Part shown: positions 517 to 56,715 of the stretch, in pieces
Numbering within the stretch: the stretch's first letter is position 1
How the letters are laid out: every line of letters starts with the position of its first letter
Origin: Marsupella aquatica
Taxonomy: Eukaryota; Plantae; Marchantiophyta
DNA length: 64,000 bases
Assembly (NCBI GenBank): GCA_973895155.1
Contig: OZ316898.1
Span: forward strand, 19,727,292 to 19,791,291
Reading direction: 5' to 3'
Program-made: the position numbers and the translations under genes
The notes under the pieces: generated by a model
Told to the model about the DNA's origin: nothing
The model's database searches: none
The model's input: only the letters and a program-made list of their open reading frames with translations

Positions 517-896
517 GGGGTTTGGAGCTGAAGGGTTTACGTTTCGTTCTGTCGCCGAGCTCGGACTTCAAACGCCAGCTGAGCTTCAATTCAATTTGTG
601 GATCTTGGCACCCTCGACCGGACATCACACCGAACATCGACAGATTATCGAGCTCGCAGCCAACCCGGTTCTTTGAAAAGGTGGATTCAGTTGAATGAGC
701 ATTGGTAGATTCATGCGTGGGCCGTAGTTTGGTTTAATTTTAGGAGAGTGTTTGTGGGCGGTCTCTTGAATTCCAGATGCTGGATTTTGTTGTCTCCTTT
801 TCACAGGATCTAATGGAGTAGTTGTTGTGTCCTGTACAATCACATTTTAGGCCGAGTGAGAAGCCTAGGAGCGAGGTGCTGGTTGGCAGACTGGTC

Positions 897-1610
897 ATGG
901 CGTCTTTGGCTGCGAGAACGGCACACACCGTCTCTCGATCCTTGGCTGGAATTTCGAGGAGCGTGGGAGGGTCGTTGTCATCCAGTGTGTTGCAATACAG
1001 GAGCTATTCTGATGAGGGATTGGATGGTCGTGTCCCGCTAAGCCCAGAGCCCTCATCAGCAGCAGATCCAGTAGTGGAAGTCCCAAAGCCGGATGGATTT
1101 GGAGCAGAAAGACCGGTCTATGAAAGGAATGTATATCCACCGAGGAACTTTCGAACTCCTCGTGGAGTGTACAAGGCTATATTGTTGGGAGAAGTGGGTC
1201 AGCTTCCAATTCAGAAAATTCTGAAGAGTGGAAGGTCGGTCACAATTTTCTCGGTTGGCACCGGTGGGATGTATAATAATAGGAGGCCTTTTGAGGGAGA
1301 AACGCCTGAAGAGTTTGCGGAACGGAGTTACACTCAGTGGCACCGAGTAGCTGTGTATCAAGACAGAGTTGCATCGCTGGTCATGCAACATGTCAAAGTA
1401 GGGTCGCAGGTGTACTTGGAGGGAAATATTGAAAGCCGGGTCTATAATGATCCACACTCCGGAATCGTGAAGCGCATACGGGAAATTGCTATCCGAGCTA
1501 ATGGCCGGTTGATGTTCATGGATACCCCGATATCAAAAGTGGCAGCTCAACCTGCTGCTGAACATGTGCCACCTTCTGCACCTCCCTCAGCTGCACAAGC
1601 TGAAACTTGA
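897..1610 (+). CDS. SSB: Organellar (probably mitochondrial) single-stranded DNA-binding protein, intronless CDS
   Basis: ATG at 897 after a likely 5'UTR intron acceptor (ttttag 850). Arg/Ser-rich transit peptide; SSB OB-fold motifs RGVYKAILLGEVGQ, QWHRVAVY, VKVGSQVYLEGNIESRVY. Confidence 0.92.
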   Translation: MASLAARTAHTVSRSLAGISRSVGGSLSSSVLQYRSYSDEGLDGRVPLSPEPSSAADPVVEVPKPDGFGAERPVYERNVYPPRNFRTPRGVYKAILLGEVGQLPIQKILKSGRSVTIFSVGTGGMYNNRRPFEGETPEEFAERSYTQWHRVAVYQDRVASLVMQHVKVGSQVYLEGNIESRVYNDPHSGIVKRIREIAIRANGRLMFMDTPISKVAAQPAAEHVPPSAPPSAAQAET

Positions 1611-2925: not shown

Positions 2926-3759
2926 CTAACCCACCCTGAACGAGTCCCGGATGTCCTTCAGATTCGGGAAGAATTTCTTCCACTGACGACCATTTCCACT
3001 AGCACTGAAGAGATAGAGCCGATTCCCGGCAGCAGTTGCACTGATCAACATGTGGGGAACTTCCAGTTCATATTGATAATACGTGCGGCCGTCATAGTTC
3101 TTCACATCCATGCTCTTCACCTTCCCCTCCACCGTCGCACCTGTCAGCTCAGGTCCAAAAGCGTCAATAACTTTCTGCGGAACACCCACATCTTCAATCT
3201 TTACATTGTCCCCGAGATCGCTTGAGAAACGGAGGACTGGAGCCACTACAACGCTGATATTTCCCTCTGAAGAGCTCTGGAAACGCAAATCAATCTCCGT
3301 TCCTCCCAGGTCAGCTATGGAGACCGGAATCTCCTGCCAGTCGGTGGGAACTTTGAAACTGTAGGGAATGATGGGACTCCATCCAACGCCATGCCCTCCT
3401 GATTTCGCATCTGGCCTCCGATATGTCCTAAGGCCCACGTCGTCGGGATCCGATAGCCCTGGAACTCTTCCAGCGAGCATGCTCTGCCCCACTGCAGCGG
3501 CAGTCCCTATACCTTGACCCAGTAATTCATTCATCGCCAACAGTGCTGATCCCAATTGTAGAATGGTCGCTCTTCGAGTTGAGGAACCCACCATACCCTG
3601 CTGGTCCGAATTGCAACGGACGCCCACAGATGCTAGTCGAAGGGGTCGCCGAGGTGTCCGAGCATTCGAAACCTTTTTATTCAAAGGATTCAAAAAGTTG
3701 GAATTGAAAGCAGCAGCAGCAATGGTGCTGCAGCCCGTGTCTAGGAGTGCGTCGCCCAT
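2926..3759 (-). CDS. PPD4: PsbP-domain protein 4 (thylakoid lumen), intronless
   Basis: ATG at 3759. Transit peptide with twin-Arg (TRRATILQLG) and AxA; GGHGVGWSPIIPY, VPVSIADLGGTEIDLRF and ATAAGNRLYLF motifs as recalled for At1g77090. Confidence 0.9.
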   Translation of the reverse strand: MGDALLDTGCSTIAAAAFNSNFLNPLNKKVSNARTPRRPLRLASVGVRCNSDQQGMVGSSTRRATILQLGSALLAMNELLGQGIGTAAAVGQSMLAGRVPGLSDPDDVGLRTYRRPDAKSGGHGVGWSPIIPYSFKVPTDWQEIPVSIADLGGTEIDLRFQSSSEGNISVVVAPVLRFSSDLGDNVKIEDVGVPQKVIDAFGPELTGATVEGKVKSMDVKNYDGRTYYQYELEVPHMLISATAAGNRLYLFSASGNGRQWKKFFPNLKDIRDSFRVG

Positions 3760-5460
3760 GTCTCCCACTGTACCTCTCTCCAAATGCAAATCTCCGAATT
3801 CTGCTCCAAAAAATCAAAACTCCAGAAGTAAATCGTGCCCCTCCCTCAGCTATCTCTTCCTCCCTGTCTCAAAGAAGTGTGACCAGGATGGCGACGTGGC
3901 ACATCCTCCTGCCGACTCGTTTGCCTGGTTGTGGTTCAGACTTTCAGTGATTCCATCTAATGGTGGGGTTGGGAAGTTCTTCTTAGACTTGGAAGCGCTG
4001 ATTGAGCAAGTGTGTCCCTGATCGACGTTTCGTTGTTCCTCCCGTTCTGAGACACCAGAGGTGATCACATTCCAAGGTCGGGTTTCTGAGTGTGTTTGAG
4101 CTTCCAAAGCGTTGGTGAGTGTCGGGAATGGAGTGCAAGTTACGGCCTAGCGCTGCGTCCCTACTTTCTGGAAGTTCTCTCCCACACGTTCCAAATGGGC
4201 AGGGTTGACATACTAGCTTCTTATCTCGTCTCCTCGCCTTTCCTCTAACCAATCGCGTCTGCTCCACTCGTTTTATCATTGATTTTGGAAACTAGCGGTC
4301 AACATCACGTTGGGACAGAAGTGGTTTCGATTTCCATTCAAACACTTTTGGATTCTTGTAGGACGCTTGTCCATTACTAACACGCAAAAAACTAGTTCAA
4401 CTCTAGAAATGTTTCTTGGGATCTGCTCTCCATGTGAGAACCATGTCACGCCAGAATCTAATGAATTATAATCTTTGGGTTTGCTTAATTAATTCCGTCT
4501 TGCTTACAGTGGTGCATAGGCAATTCAAACTTTCATAATAAATAGTCGCTTGGCCTCCTCCATCCCCTCCTCTTATAGAGAAATTAGATAAAATGTAGTC
4601 ATGTATGTCGGAAAATGGCCAAAATTGTGTTGACCCTGGTAGACCTGCTCAGTCCCATCCAACATTGAAGGCATTTGAGATTCGTAGCAGGTGTATTTCA
4701 AACAAATAAAGTGCGATAAACACCATCTTGCGTTATGGGTGTGCAAAGATTTCGATTAGTACTTAAGTTCGAAATCCAAAATCCTTGAGGCCAATAACAC
4801 ACAAAAAGGAGGAATACAAGGAATTTGGGCATCTGGAGATGCCTTAAGAATGATTACTGTACATCACGTGTAAAAAATGCGTCAGTTAATGACTGGTCGG
4901 AGATACTGGCTTTCCTTTACTAACAAAGGAACTACTTCACAAATCGGCTCCATGGACTGTCAACAGAAGAGAATGGATGAATTTCTACATGAAAGAATCT
5001 TCTCAATGGTTAATGTGTAAAGGGATGTTACTAAAATCGGTATTGTAGCAGTAATTCAAGGGAAGAGAAGCAGACCACAGACACCAACTTCTCGTCCGCT
5101 GTTGGACTGCAGTGACGACGGCTTGGACACAAGGTCTTATGCTGTGTGTTCCGTTATCCATGCCGAACGCGCAAGTGCCCAAGGTCCGCTTCATCGTGGC
5201 CATAGACAGGGCAATCTGCCACAGTTGGTTACTGTCTTTCCTTCACAACGTACAGTAGCTACCGAAGTAGGAGGAACGACATTGTACCATGCTAGAAATC
5301 CTTCCAAAGGTCAAATGTCGAATAAGCCCCGGCTCCAAGGGAATCAATCATGCTGATTAGACCACCATCTCTCGTAGACCACCATGCCTGGCAAGTCTCA
5401 GTCGGGTGGACTACTTAAGAAAGCTCTTGACAGAGAACTTATGTGGCACTTTGCGGATCC

Positions 5461-13523: not shown

Positions 13524-15273
13524 CTACCAGGGGCCGGAACTAGTCCGTCGTAACCTCGCGGACAAGACGTCCTTCTTCTTCTTTGCATTAATGCTTTTCA
13601 GAACCAGTTTCTTGTACTTTTGAATGTCCTGCTCCTGAACATACAAGAAATATGCAAGAATTAGATTGATCTGCAGAGTCTCATCCGGGAAATTCTTTGC
13701 GTACATGCTTAAAATACGACAGGAGAGATTTGACAGAACACGCGACAGAAGCAAATGATAGACCAGAAGAAGGTGCATGCTAAGTACCCGCTGAGTCTTC
13801 AGCCTGTTGTTTTCTTCCTTCAATAGTGTCACTTCTGCCTCTAATTCAACGGTGTACGCCTACACATGAGTCACAAACAAGCGGAGATCAGAGCCTGGTA
13901 GACTATGAGGTGGGAACACATGCAGCCCACAGAAAAATATGAACAGTTTGGTAAAATTGCTAGAGAATATCAACCTGTTTCCTGGCTCGGGACCTCGCTG
14001 CAGACTCCCTATTTTTAATCATCCGTCTCTGTCTCCGTTCCACGACCTTCTCCACAGGCCCGTCCGCACCTCTCTTCCTCCCTCGCATGGATCCGTCAAA
14101 ATTGCCCACGGGGGAGAGGTTGCCATGACTATTTCCCACTTCATCAGAGCCAGCACTATGTGATCCAGGGGAATTCGTAGCAAGGGCAAGAGCCATAGGG
14201 CCTCCCATCTGGATACCCAATTGCCCCAACCCCGGCGCTAGAGTACTGGCCATTCCGGTGTAGCCCCCATTGGAGCTCATGATGGGCTGCATTCCCCCGT
14301 TGGCAACCCTTGCCTTCATAGCGTAGGCATCGGCCTGCGCTTGAAACAGCTGCTGCTGTTGCTGCTGGTGAGCCTGATGCTGTGCCTGCTGCTGGCTGAT
14401 ATTGCGCAGCCAATCGACCTGGCCCTGCACTGCTTGCGGCTGCGCGATTTCACCGTTCGCAAATCCCGTGCCATTTGCAGGCGAGAGAGAGAGCGTCGCA
14501 GCCAATGACCCTGGCCCCATCCTTTCCCTCCTATCATTCCCTCGATCACTAGGACCCCCGGCTCCATTACTGCCAGTGTAGGGGGCAAAGAGAGAGTAAG
14601 GAGTCGAGGGCTGTGCCGCAAGTCCACCATCCTTGACAACCCCAGCCTTCACCAAAAACGCTTCCAGTGTCATTTCCCCATAAGTCTGGCGCCGTGAATC
14701 GCTGCTGGTCATGCCAGGGCCCGAGCTAGTGCCAGCATCCGCTTCCGCCTCTGGCGCGAGGTTGGGGTTCGTCTTTATAATGTCCCGCCACACTTCGTCT
14801 ACGGTTTTTCTGCTTATTTGCCTGGAAAGGCTGAGAGAGCCCTGTCTGGCCAAACTAGGCTGTCTAACGAGGCCCTTCTCAGAAGCCATGTGGCTGCTGG
14901 AAACCAGCTCGCCCGGCCCGGCATCACCGTCGGCATCACCACCCTCCCCGCTGCTTATCGACATCGCAGAAGCCATAGCTTGGCTCTCCTCCATAGTCCA
15001 GATATTTTTCAGAAATTCGTCCATGTTCATCGACCCAAATGCCTGCCCTGGGCCTCCCGGCTCCATCAGGGAGCGCTGCAAATCATCCAACGTGACCGAA
15101 TATATCGAACCCTGCCTAGCCAACGATTGCACCCTGGAAATTGAGCCTCCTCCCCCTCCTCCTCCAGCCATGAGTGCATTTCCGTTTGCCGTGCCGCTAC
15201 TGCTCTGTGCATGGTTTGCCATCGGTCGCGCATGAGCCTGCTGTGGTGCCTGCGCTTGAGATTGCAAACCCAT
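13524..15273 (-). CDS. ABI5: Group A bZIP transcription factor (ABI5/ABF-like); exons 15273-13975, 13859-13788, 13634-13524
   Basis: C1 LARQGSIYSVTLDDLQ, C2 LARQGSLSL..SRKTVDEVWRDI, C3 RQTYGEMTLEAFLVKAGVV; bZIP VVERRQRRMIKNRESAARSRARKQ|AYTVELE; C-terminal RRTSSGPW; typical 72-nt exon. Confidence 0.93.
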
Positions 15274-15318
15274 CGAACTCCACCACAATCCGTCAGCACA
15301 TCCTCTCAACGCAACCAC

Positions 15319-19256: not shown

Positions 19257-21123
19257 TCACGTTATAATTGAAGATGGTTCGATCGTTGCAAGTTCTTTTG
19301 CTGACCTCATTCCGATTGCTTGCCGATGATGCTCAAACTTGATTCTCGGTAGAACCTTCGTGAGGATGTCGGCTGGTTGATCATGTGTAGAGACATGTTG
19401 AACTAAAAGCTCACCAGCTAGTACTCGCTCTTGTATAAAGTGGTGATGAATTTCCAGATGCTTGGTTCTTGCGTGGAAGACAGGATTTTTTGCCAGTTTC
19501 AATGCACTGATGTTATCGCAGCTTAGGTGCACGTCCTGCTGAGTGGGTATATGAGCAGTTGAGAGATCAGATGCAATCTTGGCATCCTTGCACAGTTTTA
19601 TATTGGCTGGTGTGAGTTTTTGTTGTCGTAGCTCCTCAATAAGGCATTTCAAATAGACACCCTCTTGAGCTCCATCTGACAATGCCCGGTACTCAGCTTC
19701 AGTGGTTGACCTAGACACCGTGGGTTGCCGCTTGCTGCTCCATGTGATTGGTCCTGAGGCAAGGGTGAACAGGTACCCTCCTGTTTACCTTCTCGTATCG
19801 GAGCATGAGCTTCCCCAGTCTGAATCTGTGAATCCTTGTAGCTTAATGTCGGGATATTGTTGAAAGAATATCCCAAGGTCTTTGGTGTTGCTGATATACC
19901 TGAGGATGTGAATTGCTGCTTCCCAATGGGCTTGTTGGGGTTGAGACATAAATCTATTGACAAGTCCTACCGCAAACAAGATGTCGGGCCTTGTATTGGT
20001 CAAGTAAATGAGTTTTCCTACAAGTTGACAATATGTTGTTGAGTCGATATTGCTGGTGCCAGTCTCAGCCGAGAGTGTGAGCCCTTCGGGAAGTGGAGTT
20101 TTTGTTGATCTGCACTCGATCATATTGTAGTCTCGCAGCAACTGTGTCGAGTACTCAGTTTGATGCATGAGTATTCCTTGATTATTCACCGAGAAGTCCA
20201 CCCCGAGGTATCTTTTCACCGGCCCTAGATCTTTCATTTCGTACTTTGCGCTCAGCTTGGCCTTGAGATGATTGATCAGATCCTTGCTGGTACCAGTGAT
20301 GAGAAGGTCATCGACAAACAGCAGTATCACTACTAATTCTCCATCCCTTTTACACACATAGAGATTTGGATCAAGAGAGCTTCGTTCACAATCAATTGAA
20401 CGAAGAAAGGAATCTACCTCATCATACCATGCTCGTGGACTTTGCTTGAGTCCATATATGGATTTGAGAAGTCGACATACTAGATTCTCCTTCCCCTTGA
20501 CTTCGAAACCCATTGGTTGATCCATGAATATAGTTTCCTTGATTGTTCATCGTTACCACGTCCATTTGAGAGATTGGCCATCCGTACGCAGCAGCTAAGG
20601 CAACTATAAGCCTTACAGTGGACCATCTCACCAATGGTGCAAATGTTTCCTGAAAATCCAGTCCCGGTCTTTGCTCATTCCCTCTGGCCACTACTCGTGC
20701 TTTGTGTCGGATGTTTCCCTCATGATCTATCTTATTCCTGAGAATCCACTTGGAAGAGAGCGATTTCTCACCAGGTGGAAGCTGAACCAAATCCCATGTG
20801 CCGTTGCACTTGTGAGCATCCATCTCTGATTTCATTGCTTCTCTCCATTGCGTGTCTTGGATGGCGTCTTCGAGGTGGATGTCGTTTGAAGAGTCAGCTA
20901 GTAGTGCAATGGCAATATCCTGATCTGCAGTTGCAACATACATATGATGACCCAAAAAACGGTGATTATCTGACCTGATTCGAGTGGAAGGAGGTCGGCG
21001 TGGCGGTAGAGGCTTGGATTTGAGTAGTCGCGTGGTGATTGATGGAGCCGATATATCTGGAGTATGCTGGAGTGGCTCCTGTACTTCTTGATCTTCCGAT
21101 TGATTTTCTGCTTGAGGCCCCAT
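19257..21123 (-). pseudogene. Copia pol remnant (RT + RNase H) with frameshifts near 20545 and 19785; gag/PR/IN deleted
   Basis: KARVVARG, ETFAPLVR, QMDVVT, LKSIYGLKQSPRAW, LFVDDLLI, TRPDI, SRSTTEAEY, HARTKHLEIHHHFI, QPADILTK. Confidence 0.93.
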
Positions 21124-23600: not shown

Positions 23601-24848
23601 TTATTTTCCTGTAGTCTCTTCCAAAGAGTGCCCGTAATGCCACTCCCGTCTACCCAGATCTTGTCTAATCCTGTAGAACTCCTCTGCATCCTCCAAAATC
23701 TGCATGTCCAGCTTCACAACACTCATGCCTTCCTCGGCCCCCAGCTTGCCCAACGCCCCCTTGAATGGTAGCGCAACCTGACTTAACCCGGCATAGTTCC
23801 CCTTATTCGGCTCCCCCTGTGGTGCACCTGCATTGACAAATATCACTGCACAAGTATTCTCAAAAGCCCTTGCCACAAGAGTGCTGTCCAGGAACAAAGC
23901 CTCTGCAAAGGGATTTTGCCTGAGGCCAGCTTCACTGCAGTCAGCGGTCCACCAGGCCGGAATTATGATGAGTTTTGCCCCAGAGGAGATCATTGCCCGG
24001 AAGGCTTCAGGGAAGGCCAGGTCCCAGCAGATGAGAAGGCCTACTCTACCGAGGGGGGTGTCAAAGGCTTCATGGGGGCTGTGGCCTGAGGATGTCAGGT
24101 ATGGGCGCTCCGGATGCCAGAGGTTTTTCTTTTGGTATGATGAGAGGATTTCGCCTGTGTTGGAGATAAAGTAGACTATGTTTACCAGGGTGTCATTGCG
24201 TTCCTCGACGATTGTGCCGGGGACGATGCAGATGTTGCACTCTTTGGCAAGGGAACAGTAGGAGTCGAGGTAGTGCTGGGACTGGGCACAGAGATCTCGG
24301 AACTTGGGGTCGTCCGGGACCCAACTTGTGAGATGGTACTCTGGGAGAACGGCAAGGTGGCAGTCCTGGGAGGCGGCCGAGCGGATGAATTCACACGCTC
24401 TGGCGTGGTTGGCCTCAATTTGCATGGGCTGCAAGTACAGAGTGAGAAAATTATGCTAAGAAACATGAAATCACATGCTTGCAGGGCTTGTCTTAATATG
24501 CATGGGCTCTAGGGAACCACACAGTGAGCCATGGCAGCTAAAACGAAGGTACAATGACACTTGGACGAGCAATATGAGGCGACAGTAATTCCATTCTAAA
24601 GAAGAATTTTACTGAAGTGCACAAGAGCGACCTTTCAATAGGAATTCGGGAGCTGGAATCAGAGGAGTATAATTTCTCTACATGCTTAACAAGAATGGGG
24701 ATGAGAACGTTCTTACGTTAGGGTAGAGCTGAATGACTGCAACTTTATATACAGGCGCCGTATCGGGTGTGGCTATTAGCTCACTGGCGTGATCGCCATT
24801 ACTCACACTGTAGCGAACATGCAGTAAAGAGATGACAATAGTGGGCAT
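23601..24848 (-). CDS. Carbon-nitrogen hydrolase (nitrilase superfamily), fungal type; exons 24848 (or ACG 24761)-24717 and 24428-23601
   Basis: Catalytic triad motifs LPEY, YQKKNLW, ICWDLAFPE, plus ARAFEN; a phase-0 GT-AG intron (24716-24429) joins APVYKVAVIQLYPN to PMQIEANH. Confidence 0.85.
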
Positions 24849-50324: not shown

Positions 50325-53306
50325 TGTGCAGTTCCCCTATCTCAAAGAGGGCCTTGTATTCAGGTTTTGATTATCTGTATTTACTTTTTTGCTTTTGCAT
50401 GGTCTTGTGTTCCAATACTTATTTTGTGTTTGATTACTGGTGTTCTTATATGATTCAGTAATAAATTTTGTACCTTTTGTGCCCAATGTAAAACACTTTA
50501 AGATCAAAACTCAAACACATCACCCGACATAGTTGAGTTCAAATGCGTCACTGGACCCAAAAGAAATCCATTTTTGAACACAACACCATGGCGATTGACT
50601 ATTCATCGCAACAAATTGACCTGGGTAATCCATATCAACAGTAAGATTTGTGGAAGATTAGGGAGAACCATAAGATCTTGCAAATGGGCACTTGAATCCA
50701 GTCAGGGTTATGAGAAATCAGACTATAAAATTGCAATAAAGCTACTCTTGGGGGCCTCCTGTTTGGAGTGAAGCAAGTTGAAGTTGGGGGTGCAAGTGGA
50801 AATGGGGATGGGGGCAGGATGAGTGTTGAAAATGGTGCAGAGATTGAATGTCCTCACCTCTATTTTCTCAAAGAAGGGGATTCGGGCTAAACCCTAAACC
50901 CTACATTTCCCCCTTTGAAGCAAACCAGCTTTTGAAGGGTAGAATACATTCGCCAAAGGAAAAGTGGCACCCAGTTCTGTCTCTTCACTGCTTCCACAAG
51001 AAAACTTCAGCATACTTCCAACCCAAATGCCGCAACTGGAACACCTCCTTTCATTATGAATTCCCCTGGCCGCAACTATTCAAATATCTTCTCAACCACA
51101 CCAGCAATAGAAAACTAGTAAAATATGTAGAAAATAATACTATGCATGCAATTATTGTAGGCACCAAACTACAAAAGTGTGGCAAAAGTAATCTCCCACC
51201 CCATTGCCAACTAGTTGGCACCAAACTACATTGTTTTCAAGATTGCCTTCACATCCACAGCCTGCTTGGGCAAATCTTGTATATGAATAACTATTTAGTT
51301 TTGCTAAATAACCATAGCCCTCGAAAGTCTGGAAGTCACTCTAAACTGTACTGGAGAGCAGTGAGTTGCAGTCTTGAGGCTTTACTCAACCAAAGCCCTG
51401 GAAAGTAACTTTGTATCACTCTTTGTAAGGAAGGAGTTCATGGGTTCTTTGGGTTGGGGCACTAAAACTTGACGTGCCAGCTGTAGACTGGACCGGTGGA
51501 AAGGTGAGAGAAGTTATGCGTTCTTGCTGTGGGCTTGTTACTTCTGTGCATTCCTTTTGGGATTGTCTCCTCCCTATTTCCTTGCAGGGACCTCCAAGAT
51601 TTTCTAGGTAGCTCAAGTGCTCGTCAATCATAACCGAAGGTGATCCCATCTTCTTGTACACACTTTTCGCCTGCTGTGAATTTCCAAATTGTTGCACTGT
51701 GATTTTATCTATCCCAATAGGTGGATGGATGTCTATATATTTGCTCCATCCACCTATTTGTTTGGTGGAAATTCTCTATGCTGGTCTACTATCTTTGGTG
51801 CATTCTTCTATGCTGGCTCTCAAATTATAGTAGACCAGCACCAAAGATGCAGACCACCTGAGGTTTAGGGGTCAGAACACAGGAAACACCCTCGGTATGA
51901 ACCTACAGCCCCGCTTGGTTGTGCTTCCAGAAGTAGTGCACCAGTCAAGGAAGCACGGCTGAAGAATAAGGGAAGCACCGCTGGCGTCTGAGTCCTTAAG
52001 GTAGTAACCCTTGAATCAAAGAATCACCCAGTTGATCTACATATTTTACACTATTGAGCCCAACTGGTCAGCAACAAATCAATTGTAAAGAGAAAGATTC
52101 CCGAAATTGCTCACAGTCATCATCACCACCCATGTTCTGAATTCACTCAGAAAACCTTATGTTTCAGACAGATCTGACAAGTAGATGAGGCGAGCCTGTT
52201 ACTCAGATCGTCACTTGCACGCAAACTTTTATATTCCAGCCTAAATAATTAAAACGAACTGCCACGAGATTCCAAACAAAGCATTCCTACAGATAGTTGC
52301 GCACTACCTCAAGAACTTCCGAACTCCATAACCTACAGAATTTCGCAGCACATAACATTCTGGTCAAGACACTAGCGAGCCATTGTTCGAATGAACTAAG
52401 ACACCCACTTCTGAATCTTGGCGCGACAACTGAACACCACATAAAATGTAAGACAAACCCATGTATCGCTACATCGCCAATACAGCTTCCACAACCATGA
52501 AACTCACATTTCCTTGTTTATCTTGACCAACGTAAGAAAAAGCAAATTACCACATCTGCGAAGATCTTCATAGAGCCTGAATCGGAACTAATTCTCAAAA
52601 AACAACCATGACCAACGTCATAGCTAGAATGGTCTACAACGAAACATACAGACTGCCAACGTCATAGCTAGAATGAGAGACCTCTGAACTGTCAGTCAGA
52701 CCTTCAAATATTTTTCAATATCAGAAGAAAGGAAAGATAATGGTACAAATGCATCTAGTGCACAATATGTTGAAGCCTACATTAGTCTTCAAAAAGAATG
52801 GACACCTTCAAATAGAAACCAAAGGCTTAGAAGAAGGCAGTTGAAAAGAGTATGTAGGATCTTGCAGGTGCTTGAGCTGATCAATATTTACAGAACTGTA
52901 TTACACCATGACTCTCCAGATGTGTATGACACGTATTCTTTGTAAAGAAGTTGATCGTCAGTGATGAGGCTTCCCAAGAAGATACCCAATACATGAAGCG
53001 GGCACCATTTTGTACATAGTCAGGAAGATTACAAGACGGCAGGATTGCTGTCACTGTAGAAAGAATACCAACTATAGGCCAATGCACCAGTCTTTGCTGG
53101 TCGTCTGATCTAACTTGGTGTCGGCCTGCTTGCACTCGTGTGATCTTGGGGCCTTCTGACATACAAAACTGCTGGCCCCTGCTTCGTTTGCATTCCAAAC
53201 CTGACCTTACACTTAAACCCATCGACTTATTACCCCCATCCCGTTTCTTCTGTAATGTGACAAAAAGAATTTCAATAAGAGGGTATGTTACAAGAGATTT
53301 GTTTCT

Positions 53307-53965
53307 TTAAAGCTTATCTAGCACTATGTCCTCCGGTTGTGGGTTATCATAGGGTGTGTACTTTCTAGCTGTCCCCTTACACAATTCCACCGGGTACTTC
53401 TTCGCGTTCTTTTTTAGCTTCCTAAGTGCTGCTTGACCCAAGTCAACCTCACACACGTCAGCAAGGCGCACTAGATAGAGCAAAACATCTGACAGCTCCT
53501 CCCCCAAATGTTCTTTCTCAGACGCGTTCCAGCCTGGCAATCCTCTTGGGACCTCGCCTTTCCATTGAAAGATTTCAGACAACTCACCAACCTCGCCAAC
53601 CTGTAGACGCAGGGCAGGCTGTTACTCACGAGAGTTGAACTATAGGAATTGCTCACCTCCAGTGTCTCCCTAAATTTTACACATTCATGATAGGCTCCCT
53701 TTAATGAAAAAGCTCAAGGAAATCCAGAATCTTAGTTTCATTATTTCTTTGCAGATGTAAATCGATTTGTAGCACAGATCAATTTCCTTAATCAAGACTG
53801 GTGTACTTACGAGGGCAAGAAGAACATTGCGCGGGCTATGGAACTGGTCCCAGTCTCTTTCTCGAGCAAAATCTGCCATTCTCCTTTGGAGGTCCTTGAT
53901 TGTCACTGATCCCATTGCTAATCCACCAAAGTTATCATTTTCCTTCTTGAGGATAGCTTCAGTTT
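53307..53965 (-). CDS. dCTP pyrophosphatase 1 / MazG-like domain; exons 53965-53811 and 53600-53307 (possible own ATGs at 53984 and 53915)
   Basis: FARERDWDQFHSPRNVLLAL|VGEVGELSEIFQWKGE...HLGEELSDVLLYLVRLADVCEVDLG...KLKKNAKKYP. Confidence 0.92.
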
Positions 53966-54912
53966 CTGCCACAAGTATACACATGTTATAAAAAAATTAA
54001 TCCTGGACTAGCGTCACAATACCCAGTAAGAAAGCTAGAATAGAAACTCATCAAGGCAACTAGCAAAGAGGCTGCCTCATCAAACATATTACGTGACAAA
54101 GACACAGACACGTCAGCCTGGAAAAATAAATATTCGACGTCCATTGCAAAGCAGAACAGCAAAATCTGTCGCCACACTTCTACTTTATGCCACACGTTTT
54201 CACGAGTTTGCTACGAGCCCTTAAATCGAAGGAAGGAAAGTTCCACAGAGTACCCCGACAGTCACCGCAGACAAGAGAAAACAGAGAAAACGGGAAGCAT
54301 TATGAGTTTGGCATAAACAAACAACAGGAAGATATTTGTCATGGTCTATATCTTGACATAGTATATACCCATATCTTATGTGATAAATGAGGTGAACGCT
54401 ACCATCGCGTAAGTTTAAGAAGTCTTAATGCATACTCGTTGAATATATAATCTGACATGAACGATCGACAATCGACAAATCTGGGAAGGTTCGGTGAGAA
54501 GTTGAGGCAGTTGATGACCCACAACTCCCAAACCAAATGGAAACGTAGGTGATGATTTGCTCTGAGACATAACATAATGGAATACTACCAGAAATGACTG
54601 TGCATTGACGGTAAGTGCGCTCACTTATCTCCACAGTCATTTCAGCCAACGTAATTTAAGAAAAGGGTTCTTCAAGTTTAGGTAGAATGAGTATTGAATT
54701 TCAACATCTGACTAGTTTCTTGGATAGAAAACTGGTGACATATTTTATATAATTCTCTGTCCGGCATTATAATATTATGTTACTTTATGTTTAGCTTTTC
54801 ATTTCTGTTTAGCAATCTGACCAAGATCCTAGAACTTGCACTCTGACTTGCAGAGAAAATTAACGATATGGACAAAGGGCATACAATTGTCACAGGTCAG
54901 TGCAATACTCAC

Positions 54913-55579
54913 TTGCCAGTGACGCTCGCGTGCGTTGAGGCGATGCCGCCACGATTGATAAATTAGGATGGTGCTCTTCGGGCTCACCCGAACCGTTCTC
55001 AGGCGAAGTCGCCACGAACTTGAAGGAGGACGCCAGCATCTCGTCCATGCGGGGAAAGAAAGGCCAGAGAGAGTTCACAGCGCCAGTAGCCGCCTGCCTC
55101 TGCTTCTCCACTTTGTACCGACGTTTGAGGTTCTCCATCTTCCACTTACATTGCTCGGCGGTTTTGGCCGATCTCGAACCCTCGCACTTCAAATTGACAT
55201 ACCTCGCTACATCCTCCCAATCATTGCTCCGCAAATTGCCCCTACTCAAACTCACATACTTCTCTTCGTACACCTCGAGAAGGTAATTCACAGCCGTCTC
55301 GCTCCAGTCCGTCGGATTCTCTTTCTTCCTCTCTTCTCCGCCCACTATCTCCCTCTTGGCCTTCTTTAGGCCCTTGGCCTCTACAGCCACCGGTGGCTGA
55401 TGCACGACTAGAGCTCCTGCTGCTACTAATCCTGCCCCCAGTTCTCCACCACCACCAACGTGCCCTTCCCCGTCCTCCGGACTGCCCCCCATCCCCCCCA
55501 CAGCGTTATATGCCGAAAGATGTTGCTGCTGAAGATGCGGGTGCTGATGATGGTGCTCCCCACCCCCTCCACTCGCCAT
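54913..55579 (-). CDS. Trihelix (Myb/SANT-like, SIP1/ASIL-type) DNA-binding exon; probably exon 1 of the dCTPase gene
   Basis: DWSETAVNYLLEVYEEKY...GNLRSNDWEDVA...KTAEQCKWKMENLKRRYKVEK...WPFFPRMD; strong donor GTGAGT at 54912. Confidence 0.85.
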
Positions 55580-55940
55580 TTGCTTCTTCCTCGCCACTGC
55601 TGCACTCTTTCCTCCTTCCCCCTCTCAGCTTTCGTTGCTTTTCCTCCCTTCCTCCTTGTCCTCTCCGGAGAACCTAACCAATATTACTCCTCCCAAAATC
55701 TCGTTCCTCTCCTAGCCTTCTTCTCCTCCTTTTGAGCTCTGAAGCCGTGGCCTCGACTTGCCTTTCTTGCCCTGCCTGCCAGCCTTCTCAATCCCCGTCC
55801 CCGCGCCACATCCCCGGACCGCGATGACCACCACCACTCCCACGAGAAACTCTCTCCTCGCCAGTCTTCCCCCTCAGCTTATCCTCCCTCCTTCTCGCAA
55901 ACCTAAACCAAAATAATCCACTTCCTCCCAGTAGAATCTC

Positions 55941-56715
55941 CTCCACTTCCGTCCTCCCTCGTTGCCTATCGTCGTCCCTGCATGCTCTACGCAATCAACA
56001 ACACCCGTCCCTGCGGCAAAATTTCATACATAGCCCCAAGTTGCCAAATAATTGCCCTCGCAACCGATCATCAATTGCTTGTCCGAGACGATGATACACA
56101 CCGCAACCACCGAAAACGCTCCTCTCGTCTGATTGGATCGACCTTTCGATCGACCCGCAACAGCCACGCTGCATGCACCCAAGGAGAGAGATGTCTCGAA
56201 ACGAGACTGCAAGCTACACGGCCACCGGATGGCTGTCGTCCATAGCAAGGAAACAAGCAAGCAAGCCAACAAACGGGAGAGAGGGACGAGATGGGCAGAA
56301 ATCAGAGCACAACACCGCAAAATCGAGGAAATCAGCGCCTCTCCGATGAAACTCGCTGAAATCAGAGAGGGGAGACGAGGTAATCAGAGAGGGCAGAGAG
56401 ACGACGAAGGTCGAGGCGATGGAGTTTTGGAGGTTGAGGCGATGGATGCCGAGGGATACAAAAGCCCGGAAGCGAGGCCGAAAAGAAAGGATGGTGGTGA
56501 TGGTGGAGAAGGAGAAGGAGGAGGACGAGGAGGAGCATCGACGAACGAGAGCGACGGTGGCAGACGGCACCGATGGACGGCATCGCGGAGGCTGTCGCGC
56601 GTCAGACGAGGCCCGACTGCCGCCAATCGCGCGCAGTCGCGTAGTCAGGACGGCAGGCGGACGGCGTGCGGACGGCGCGGGGCGGACCAGTTCGTTGGCG
56701 TACGTTGGTCGCTGC
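55941..56715 (-). repeat. 5' leader/promoter region of the trihelix gene, homologous in inverted orientation to 62765-63465
   Basis: Colinear matches such as ctgcggcaaaa, aaccgatcat.aattgct, aaacgctcct..cgtctg.ttggatcgacc, ggaggacgaggaggagcatcgacgaacgagagcgac. Confidence 0.88.

What the first reader, a model, noticed from the sequence alone, without database searches (positions are those of the whole stretch)
53307..55579. Predicted fusion of a trihelix DNA-binding domain with a dCTP pyrophosphatase
Seen: the trihelix exon (ATG 55579) has a strong phase-1 donor (GCA A|GTGAGT, 54912). The dCTPase region has a phase-1 acceptor (T-tract..taac..tgtggcag|AA ACT, 53966). Removing the 947-nt intron gives one 371-aa ORF: His/Gln/Gly-rich N-terminus, trihelix, linker, then a complete MazG-like dCTPase. 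Unspliced, the trihelix ORF stops 7 codons after the donor and lacks the C-terminal coiled coil usual in SIP1/ASIL proteins. Known: plant DCTPP1 proteins are normally small standalone enzymes, and a trihelix-uridylate-kinase-like fusion (At3g10030) exists. Inference: a DNA-tethered nucleotide-sanitising enzyme (e.g. for modified dCTPs) or a nucleotide-sensing transcription factor. In-frame ATGs at 53984/53915 could give an enzyme-only isoform.
Basis: partly seen in the sequence, partly recalled or inferred. Interest (0 to 1): 0.82.

Follow-up and report, generated by a model that had tools for sequence, protein, structure and literature searches.

The report
Liverwort trihelix–dCTP pyrophosphatase fusion gene
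This liverwort gene joins a plant DNA-binding (trihelix) domain to a complete enzyme that destroys dCTP and modified dCTP; the joint is conserved across distant liverworts and sits in public annotations (Marchantia MpTRIHELIX24), but I found no paper that discusses it as a fusion.

Summary
On the minus strand, three coding exons (55579-54913, 53965-53811, 53600-53307) add up to 371 codons. The first carries Myb_DNA-bind_4 (trihelix). The last two carry a complete MazG-like DCTPP1 core with its metal-binding acidic residues intact.

The fusion is not a chance pairing of splice sites. Deposited proteins of Calypogeia fissa (two copies), Marchantia polymorpha (MpTRIHELIX24 = Mp1g29240), M. paleacea and two Riccia species have the same architecture. 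In the four related genomic loci I read (C. fissa twice, M. polymorpha, R. sorocarpa):
- exon 1 ends in phase 1 at a "caa|GT" donor;
- exon 2 is exactly 155 nt;
- the 19 linker codons at the start of exon 2 are under purifying selection;
- C. fissa and M. polymorpha have no in-frame ATG just upstream of exon 2.

M. polymorpha and both Riccia proteins also lack a Met in the linker.

Outside liverworts only standalone (136-170 aa) or otherwise-fused dCTPases were found.

No transcript evidence could be reached, and no paper discusses the fusion. The function, probably a DNA-bound, likely tetrameric dCTP/modified-dCTP pyrophosphatase, is inferred.

The scan had not noted this before.

The parts
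55580..55956 (-). Conserved purine-rich leader upstream of the ATG (probable 5' UTR and proximal promoter)
   Evidence: blastn of the C. fissa loci L003 and L004 aligns from window 55956 down through exon 1 at about 86% identity. The sequence is read. The transcription start was not determined.
54913..55579 (-). Coding exon 1 (667 nt, ends in phase 1): His/Gln/Gly-rich N-terminus, basic stretch, trihelix domain, Ser/Pro-rich tail
   Evidence: It is 92% identical to C. fissa P0155/P0002 and 74% to Marchantia P0004. Exon 1 length is 1 mod 3 in all five loci.
55037..55309 (-). Trihelix (Myb_DNA-bind_4) domain, residues 91-181
   Evidence: Pfam PF13837, E 1.6e-16, profile positions 3-89 of 89. The domain is 96% identical between Calypogeia and Marchantia over 116 residues.
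53966..54912 (-). Intron 1 (947 nt, phase 1, GTGAGT...CAG) between the trihelix part and the dCTPase part
   Evidence: The homologous intron is 848/850 nt in C. fissa, 3073 nt in M. polymorpha and 722 nt in R. sorocarpa. It is 67-69% identical to C. fissa, against 92-95% for the exons.
53811..53965 (-). Coding exon 2 (155 nt): 19-codon linker, then the first helix of the dCTPase
   Evidence: Exactly 155 nt with no indel in all five loci. Linker dN/dS is 0.12-0.33.
53601..53810 (-). Intron 2 (210 nt, phase 0, GTAAGT...CAG) inside the dCTPase domain
   Evidence: The position is conserved in all five loci.
53307..53600 (-). Coding exon 3 (97 codons plus TAA): catalytic core and C-terminal KYT tail of the dCTPase
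   Evidence: Pfam MazG-like, E 4.3e-10. Translation. Alignment to mouse DCTPP1.
53487..53594 (-). Stretch holding the four metal-binding acidic residues (GEVGEL and GEELSD motifs)
   Evidence: They align with mouse DCTPP1 E63, E66, E95 and D98 (the residue roles come from my knowledge of the RS21-C6 structure papers). They are invariant in 15 plant sequences.
52629..53306 (-). Conserved sequence downstream of the stop codon (probable 3' UTR)
   Evidence: The blastn alignment to C. fissa L003 and L004 runs on at about 84% to window 52629. The poly(A) site was not determined.

Best explanation
Gene structure. This is one gene of a liverwort closely related to Calypogeia fissa, with three coding exons. 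It is the ortholog of Marchantia polymorpha MpTRIHELIX24 (Mapoly0107s0039, Mp1g29240). It encodes a 371-residue protein made of four parts:
- a low-complexity N-terminus with basic stretches;
- one trihelix (Myb/SANT-like) DNA-binding domain;
- a linker of about 60 residues;
- a complete DCTPP1-type (MazG-like, all-alpha) dCTP pyrophosphatase.

Origin. The fusion arose once, at or before the common ancestor of Marchantiopsida and Jungermanniopsida. A trihelix exon came to be spliced onto the DCTPP1 gene at, or right after, its old start codon.

Most likely mode of action (inferred). The enzyme core oligomerises as DCTPP1 does in animals, as a tetramer with shared active sites. It therefore carries several trihelix domains. 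The protein then sits on DNA or chromatin in the nucleus and hydrolyses dCTP and modified dCTPs (such as 5-methyl-dCTP) to the monophosphate.

What is shown: the domains, the intact catalytic residues, the conserved splice architecture, and purifying selection on both domains and on the linker.
What is inferred: splicing in vivo, enzyme activity, oligomerisation, DNA binding and localisation.
For: Domains. Pfam hits per exon. The dCTPase core aligns with mouse and human DCTPP1 structures at E 9e-38 over 115 residues with the acidic metal ligands kept. Those residues are invariant among plant homologues.

Same architecture elsewhere. The exon-1 query retrieved four fused proteins of 363-370 aa: C. 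fissa P0002, M. polymorpha, and two Riccia species. Each carries PF13837 plus PF12643/PF03819. Cluster look-ups added C. fissa P0155 and M. paleacea P0158, both 371 aa.

Sequence-level proof that exon 2 is internal coding sequence:
- Phase-1 donor 'caa|GT' and a phase-1 acceptor at homologous positions in five loci.
- Exon 1 length is always 1 mod 3 despite indels.
- Exon 2 is always 155 nt.
- The first 19 codons of exon 2 have dN/dS 0.12-0.33.
- M. polymorpha and both C. fissa copies have no in-frame ATG between the nearest upstream stop and exon 2.
- M. polymorpha and both Riccia proteins have no Met in the linker.
- Read-through peptides after the donor are 7-23 residues long and unrelated between species.
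- Exons are 92-95% identical to C. fissa; introns and flanks are 67-75%.

Single origin. The fused dCTPase domains form one clade (100/98 support) with short branches.

Restriction to liverworts. A HMMER scan of 1.84 billion representatives put no other trihelix-dCTPase protein among the best 150. Two word-index searches with the trihelix part found liverwort proteins only.

Expression of the Marchantia ortholog. Columns that read as RPKM values show about 24-30, and a promoter-reporter line scores non-zero in most columns (supplements of PMC6174852 and PMC11132968).
Against: No transcript spanning the exon 1-exon 2 junction could be examined. The short Logan contigs that carry parts of the gene (L002, L086) are collinear with genomic DNA, introns included, so they say nothing about splicing. 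The JGI contig behind P0003 gave no DNA, but its protein reads on past the junction position into unrelated residues.

The deposited gene models may partly copy one another through homology-based annotation.

The AlphaFold model was too poor to use (mean pLDDT 45).

Whether liverworts lack a separate DCTPP1 gene is not established. None appears among the best 120 of 1531 hits, which is weak evidence.

Enzyme activity, oligomeric state, DNA binding and localisation are untested.
Confidence: 0.8

Rival explanations
1. The fusion gene is real, but it works chiefly as a transcription factor. The MazG-like core would serve as the oligomerisation module, replacing the C-terminal coiled coil of SIP1/ASIL-type trihelix proteins. 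It might also act as a sensor that couples DNA binding to dCTP levels. Catalysis would be secondary.
For: The ortholog is catalogued as a transcription factor, MpTRIHELIX24, and a promoter-reporter line was built for it. The trihelix domain is 96% identical between Calypogeia and Marchantia, which points to a tightly constrained binding function. No coiled coil follows the trihelix: the secondary-structure call shows only a disordered linker, from a low-confidence model. That DCTPP1 cores are obligate oligomers comes from my knowledge of the 2OIG and 7MU5 structures.
Against: All four metal ligands and the substrate-pocket Trp and Tyr residues are kept. The dCTPase domain evolves more slowly in liverworts than in other plant lineages (short branches). 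A mere scaffold would not need that. No standalone DCTPP1 of a liverwort was seen that could carry the enzymatic duty.
Confidence: 0.3
2. The locus mostly yields separate products, and the fused mRNA is a minor form. One product would be a trihelix-only protein, through retention of intron 1 or polyadenylation within it. The other would be an enzyme-only protein, from a start site inside intron 1 using ATG 53984 or 53915.
For: In this window both in-frame ATGs exist. Unspliced, the trihelix ORF closes after 7 codons, so a stable short product is conceivable. Intron 1 of M. polymorpha is 3 kb, room enough for an internal promoter.
Against: ATG 53984 is missing in both C. fissa copies and in M. 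polymorpha. The Met at 53915 is missing in M. polymorpha and both Riccia, where the first Met lies inside helix 1 of the enzyme. The linker codons upstream of these Mets are under purifying selection. That makes sense only if they are translated from exon 1. The read-through tails are not conserved.
Confidence: 0.1
3. These are two neighbouring genes (a short trihelix gene and a standalone DCTPP1) wrongly merged by gene predictors. The error would then have spread between liverwort annotations by homology.
For: No RNA evidence was reachable here. The trihelix-only ORFs in short contigs (P0001, P0003, P0159) look like complete small proteins.
Against: Those short ORFs are simply exon 1 read on past the donor: L002 is collinear with the genome into the intron, and the P0003 and P0159 proteins run on past the junction position into unrelated residues. 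Without exon 1, the conserved linker codons of exon 2 have no start codon in M. polymorpha. Phase compatibility, the 155-nt exon 2 and same-strand adjacency are kept between Jungermanniopsida and Marchantiopsida.
Confidence: 0.05

Closest known systems
MpTRIHELIX24 (Mapoly0107s0039 / Mp1g29240; BBN00444.1, 'dCTP diphosphatase') of Marchantia polymorpha, and the C. fissa proteins CAM6126819.1 and CAM6093629.1
   Same: Same domain order, same two intron positions and phases, and the same 155-nt exon 2. Exon-wise identity is 92-99% to C. fissa. To M. polymorpha it is 74% over exon 1 by BLASTP, then 38/50 and 86/97 aligned residues for exons 2 and 3. These are orthologs.
   Different: Another species. 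The low-complexity N-terminus differs in length. Intron 1 is 947 nt here against 3073 nt in M. polymorpha. Those entries are unstudied annotations: listed as a transcription factor in one place and as an enzyme in another, never discussed as both.
DCTPP1 (XTP3-TPA / RS21-C6), the animal and plant standalone dCTP pyrophosphatase (PDB 2OIG, 6SQW, 7MU5)
   Same: MazG-like all-alpha core, E 9e-38 to mouse DCTPP1 over residues 29-143. The acidic metal ligands, pocket Trp and Tyr residues and the C-terminal KYT tail are kept.
   Different: Standalone proteins are 136-170 aa in Klebsormidium, Sphagnum, lycophytes, ferns, gymnosperms and angiosperms. Here about 220 residues with a DNA-binding domain precede the core, and the junction falls where the standalone proteins start ('MKGE…' against 'A|K-T-E…').
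At3g10030, the Arabidopsis 'trihelix/aa-kinase chimera'
   Same: A single trihelix domain sits N-terminal to a small-molecule enzyme fold in one plant protein (table in PMC5526864).
   Different: The partner there is an amino-acid/uridylate-kinase family domain, not a MazG-like pyrophosphatase. No relation between the two trihelix domains was tested here. The word-index searches with this trihelix found no non-liverwort relative.
SIP1/ASIL-type single-trihelix factors
   Same: One trihelix with the spacing W…(R)GNL…W…KT..QCK.K..NLK+RYK (read; the clade pattern is from my memory).
   Different: The C-terminal coiled coil typical of that clade is absent and the dCTPase takes its place. Clade membership was not tested, because no reference sequences could be fetched.

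Membership tests
DCTPP1 / MazG-like all-alpha NTP pyrophosphatase (PF12643) | Profile match above Pfam's gathering score | tested here: met
   Exon 3 alone scores 40.1 bits against a cut-off of 27, E 4.3e-10. PF03819 scores 23.9 against 22.
DCTPP1 / MazG-like all-alpha NTP pyrophosphatase (PF12643) | Full-length homology of the core to solved DCTPP1 structures | tested here: met
   P0155, which is 98-99% identical to the window over exons 2 and 3, aligns at residues 244-358 with mouse DCTPP1 29-143, E 9e-38.
DCTPP1 / MazG-like all-alpha NTP pyrophosphatase (PF12643) | Four acidic metal ligands (E63, E66, E95, D98 in mouse numbering) | tested here: met
   The GEVGEL and EELSD motifs are aligned and identical and invariant in 15 sequences. 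The residue roles come from my knowledge of the structure papers.
DCTPP1 / MazG-like all-alpha NTP pyrophosphatase (PF12643) | Tetramer formation and hydrolysis of dCTP and 5-modified dCTP | not testable with these tools
   Needs recombinant protein. The monomer AlphaFold model was of low confidence.
Trihelix (GT-factor) family, Myb_DNA-bind_4 (PF13837) | Profile match above the gathering score | tested here: met
   60.9 bits against a cut-off of 27, E 1.6e-16, covering profile positions 3-89 of 89.
Trihelix (GT-factor) family, Myb_DNA-bind_4 (PF13837) | Three helices with the conserved aromatic residues | tested here: met
   Trp in TDW, NDW and CKW. Helices are predicted at 95-112, 120-134 and 139-170 of P0155, from a low-confidence model.
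Trihelix (GT-factor) family, Myb_DNA-bind_4 (PF13837) | Sequence-specific binding to GT-type elements | not testable with these tools
   Needs DAP-seq or EMSA.
SIP1/ASIL clade of trihelix factors | Clustering with SIP1-clade reference proteins, and a C-terminal coiled coil | not tested
   No reference sequences were reachable: the searches with the trihelix part returned liverwort proteins only. No coiled coil follows the domain. A linker and the dCTPase do.
Liverwort MpTRIHELIX24 orthogroup (trihelix-DCTPP1 fusion) | Same domain order, same intron positions and phases, high identity over the full length | tested here: met

The most novel reading that the evidence does not exclude
Liverworts have replaced the free DCTPP1 enzyme with a chromatin-tethered one. 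The trihelix domains would park a tetrameric dCTPase on DNA, where it removes modified dCTPs arising from DNA turnover before polymerases can re-insert them. Candidates are 5-methyl-dCTP and, in a lineage with massive 5mC and 4mC reprogramming in sperm (bioRxiv 10.1101/2021.02.12.428880), possibly N4-methyl-dCTP. This would protect methylation patterns locally. The ortholog appears in a list shared by antheridia, antheridiophores and archegoniophores in PMC6174852.
Probability: 0.2. Interest if true: 0.75.

Novelty: new variant of a known kind. Interest (0 to 1): 0.55.

Why it matters
Enzymes that cleanse the nucleotide pool are thought of as free, soluble proteins. A version tied to a DNA-binding domain, and kept across both major liverwort classes sampled, suggests one of two things. 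Nucleotide cleansing may be done locally on chromatin, or a metabolic enzyme has been turned into part of a transcription factor.

Either reading is directly testable in Marchantia, which has easy knock-outs and a named gene (Mp1g29240). It also bears on how DNA methylation patterns are kept clean of recycled modified cytosines.

There is a practical warning too. The gene is listed as a transcription factor in one catalogue and as 'dCTP diphosphatase' in another, and neither label tells the whole story.

Tried and rejected
- Transcript evidence: none obtained. The look-up of encoding contigs for the Marchantia protein returned genomic contigs only. The Logan contigs L002 and L086 are genomic skims with introns. 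The JGI contig of P0003 gave no DNA.
- AlphaFold on P0155 with a 25-row alignment gave mean pLDDT 45. No fold search was run on it.
- The bacterial promoter/terminator scan of intron 1 does not apply to a plant and was ignored.
- ESM Atlas on the trihelix part gave only generic Myb/SANT-like clusters.
- Literature: no text hit for Mapoly0107s0039, Mp1g29240 or MpTRIHELIX24. The 'trihelix' plus 'dCTP' search gave no relevant paper.
- The joined (spliced) model of the window itself was not built, searched or folded. The exons were searched apart by reference, and the near-identical deposited proteins P0155 and P0002 stood in for the whole.
- In one search the exons of the public loci L001 and L003-L005 were concatenated inside a script, only to find which splice sites reproduce the deposited proteins.
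Full report
**What is in the sequence.**
On the minus strand an ORF opens at ATG 55579 and runs to a donor GCA A|GTGAGT (GT at 54912-54911). That makes 667 nt, ending in phase 1. If unspliced it closes 7 codons later (SEYCTDL*).

An acceptor follows 947 nt downstream: a T-rich tract, then tgtggcag|AA ACT, with AG at 53967-53966. It opens a 155-nt exon (53965-53811) that ends at CTC|GTAAGT.

It is 210 nt and phase 0 (53810-53601), and it leads to the last exon (53600-53307, stop TAA).

The exon lengths sum to 1116 nt, that is 371 codons plus stop. The split codon A|AA reads Lys.

Pfam, run exon by exon, gives:
- Myb_DNA-bind_4 for exon 1: E 1.6e-16, residues 91-181.
- MazG-like for exon 3: E 4.3e-10.

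I did not build, search or fold the joined model of the window. The exons were used apart, by reference. The near-identical deposited proteins stood in for the whole.

**Is the join real?**
A search with exon 1 alone returned six protein clusters, all from liverworts. Four of them, 363-370 aa long, carry both PF13837 and PF12643/PF03819: Calypogeia fissa P0002, Marchantia polymorpha, Riccia sorocarpa and R. fluitans. Cluster look-ups added a second C. fissa copy (P0155, 371 aa) and M. paleacea (371 aa).

Both C. fissa proteins have exactly the predicted junction, …SLA-K-TEAILKK…. The window's three exons are 92%, 98% and 99% identical to P0155. The window therefore comes from a close relative of C. 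fissa, not from that assembly.

**Evidence that does not lean on other annotations.**
Annotations can copy each other, so I fetched the genomic loci L001 (M. polymorpha), L003 and L004 (C. fissa) and L005 (R. sorocarpa). I derived their exon structures from the sequence.

| Locus | Exon 1 | Intron 1 | Exon 2 |
|---|---|---|---|
| Window | 667 | 947 | 155 |
| L003 (C. fissa) | 670 | 848 | 155 |
| L004 (C. fissa) | 670 | 850 | 155 |
| L001 (M. polymorpha) | 643 | 3073 | 155 |
| L005 (R. sorocarpa) | 655 | 722 | 155 |

- Exon 1 length is always 1 mod 3.
- The donor is always caa|GT.
- Exon 2 is always 155 nt with no indel.
- Intron 2 is always at the same codon boundary.

Against C. fissa the exons are 92-95% identical. 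Both introns and the flanks are 67-75% identical.

The first 19 codons of exon 2 form the linker, ahead of the enzyme's first helix. They show dN/dS 0.12-0.33 in all comparisons, so they are translated in this frame.

M. polymorpha and both C. fissa copies have no in-frame ATG between the nearest upstream stop and exon 2. The M. polymorpha and Riccia proteins also have no Met in the linker. R. sorocarpa, like this window, does have an in-frame ATG 7 codons before the acceptor. So in M. polymorpha those conserved linker codons can only be reached from exon 1.

The peptides obtained by reading through the donor are 7-23 residues long and unrelated between species.

Together this makes a wrongly merged pair of genes very unlikely.

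**What I could not get: RNA.**
- Look-ups of the Marchantia protein returned genomic contigs only.
- The short Logan contigs with parts of the gene (L002, L086) are collinear with the genome, introns included. They are genome skims.
- The JGI contig gave no DNA.
- The metagenome scan was swamped by dCTPase-only matches.

Indirect support comes from two papers' supplements:
- The M. polymorpha ortholog is listed as MpTrihelix24 = Mapoly0107s0039. Columns that read as RPKM values show about 24-30 in one comparison, and the gene appears in a list shared by antheridia, antheridiophores and archegoniophores (PMC6174852).
- It is listed as Mp1g29240, with a promoter-reporter line that scores non-zero in most of its columns (PMC11132968).

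No paper text in the library names Mapoly0107s0039, Mp1g29240 or MpTRIHELIX24. 'Trihelix' with 'dCTP' gave nothing relevant.

**The enzyme half.**
P0155 aligns over residues 244-358 with mouse DCTPP1 residues 29-143 at E 9e-38, and similarly with the human enzyme.

The GEVGEL and EELSD motifs are identical. They hold the four acidic metal ligands (E63, E66, E95, D98 in mouse numbering; the roles are from my knowledge of the RS21-C6 structures). They are invariant in an alignment with Klebsormidium, Sphagnum, lycophyte, fern, gymnosperm and angiosperm enzymes. The pocket Trp and Tyr residues and the C-terminal KYT tail are kept too. By sequence the enzyme should be active.

In a tree the six fused domains form one clade (100/98) with markedly short branches. 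That fits a single origin and strong constraint. The backbone of that tree is unresolved.

**The DNA-binding half.**
The trihelix domain is 96% identical between Calypogeia and Marchantia over 116 residues. Yet two word-index searches found no relative outside liverworts.

Its pattern (TDW…RGNL…NDW…KT..QCKWK..NLKRRYK) recalls SIP1/ASIL-type factors. That is from memory, and clade membership was not tested.

No coiled coil follows the domain. Next come a conserved SSFKFVATSPENGSG motif, a variable Ser/Pro stretch and the linker.

The AlphaFold run was of low confidence (mean pLDDT 45). I used it only for its helix calls.

**Range.**
Standalone dCTPases of 136-170 aa are the rule from Klebsormidium through mosses to flowering plants. 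None of the best 120 hits is named as a liverwort protein. That hints that the fusion may be the only DCTPP1 of liverworts, but does not show it.

The N-termini of several standalone proteins ('MKGE…') align with the junction 'A|K-(T/A/P)-E…'. This suggests the acceptor arose at the old start codon. That alignment of short tails is weak.

A HMMER pass over 1.84 billion representatives placed only the liverwort cluster as a trihelix-dCTPase protein among the best 150. The remaining hits were standalone, tandem-duplicated, or fused to other domains.

**How it most likely works.**
Shown:
- one conserved gene;
- both domains and the linker under purifying selection;
- catalytic residues intact.

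Inferred:
- the core oligomerises like animal DCTPP1 and so presents several trihelix domains;
- basic stretches and the DNA-binding domain place it in the nucleus on DNA;
- there it hydrolyses dCTP and modified dCTPs.

I put about 0.8-0.9 on the single fused gene. Given that, I put roughly 0.4 on a tethered active enzyme as the main role, and about 0.3 on a transcription factor that uses the core for oligomerisation or nucleotide sensing.

An enzyme-only isoform from ATG 53984 or 53915 is unlikely to be a conserved feature. The first ATG is absent in C. fissa and M. polymorpha. The second is absent in M. polymorpha and Riccia.

**Comparison and novelty.**
The gene is an ortholog of deposited but unstudied models. 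One source labels it a transcription factor and another labels it 'dCTP diphosphatase'.

The nearest described analogy is the Arabidopsis At3g10030 'trihelix/aa-kinase chimera' (PMC5526864), which has a different partner domain.

I rate it a new variant of known kinds: a DCTPP1 with a DNA-binding domain, or a trihelix factor with an enzyme in place of its coiled coil. It is moderately interesting and readily testable in Marchantia.

Earlier notes of this scan call the genome a liverwort, which agrees with my own hits. The scan had not noted this fusion before.

Noticed in passing
P0075 cluster, P0094 cluster, P0106, P0147 (proteins): Other DCTPP1-type cores are fused to nucleic-acid or interaction modules. 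One has a C-terminal KH domain (375 aa, seen on many JGI/ENA contigs). One has an N-terminal RanBP-type zinc finger (8 ENA members). One has a homeodomain (one Logan contig). One has a SAM domain (Reticulomyxa filosa). Joining this enzyme to binding modules may be recurrent.
   Followed up: partly
P0007, P0009, P0011, P0013, P0015 and others: More than 20 of the best dCTPase hits match the dCTPase query in two stretches. Many of them carry two full MazG-like cores in tandem on one chain of 220-320 aa, including a transcriptome-derived MMETSP protein.
   Followed up: partly
window 53984-53966 and L005 just upstream of 5378: Both this window and Riccia sorocarpa have an in-frame ATG 7 codons before the exon-2 acceptor (MCILVAE and MCVLIAE). 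C. fissa and M. polymorpha lack it. Probably chance in a T/G-rich tract, but it would give an enzyme-only product from an unspliced internal transcript.
   Followed up: partly
window 19788-21123 (-): A Ty1/copia-type reverse transcriptase (RVT_2) is split over two overlapping ORFs, so it is a frameshifted retroelement remnant.
   Followed up: no
window 822-1607 (+), 2929-3789 (-), 13963-15318 (-), 23604-24434 (-): Long ORFs or exons match the SSB family (probably an organellar single-strand-binding protein), PsbP, the start of a bZIP domain at the end of a 452-aa ORF (below Pfam's cut-off), and a carbon-nitrogen hydrolase.
   Followed up: no
window 55600-55960 (-): The leader upstream of the ATG is a long purine-rich (GA/GGA) tract conserved with C. 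fissa at about 86%. It gives strong strand skew (GC skew down to -0.55 on the plus strand).
   Followed up: no
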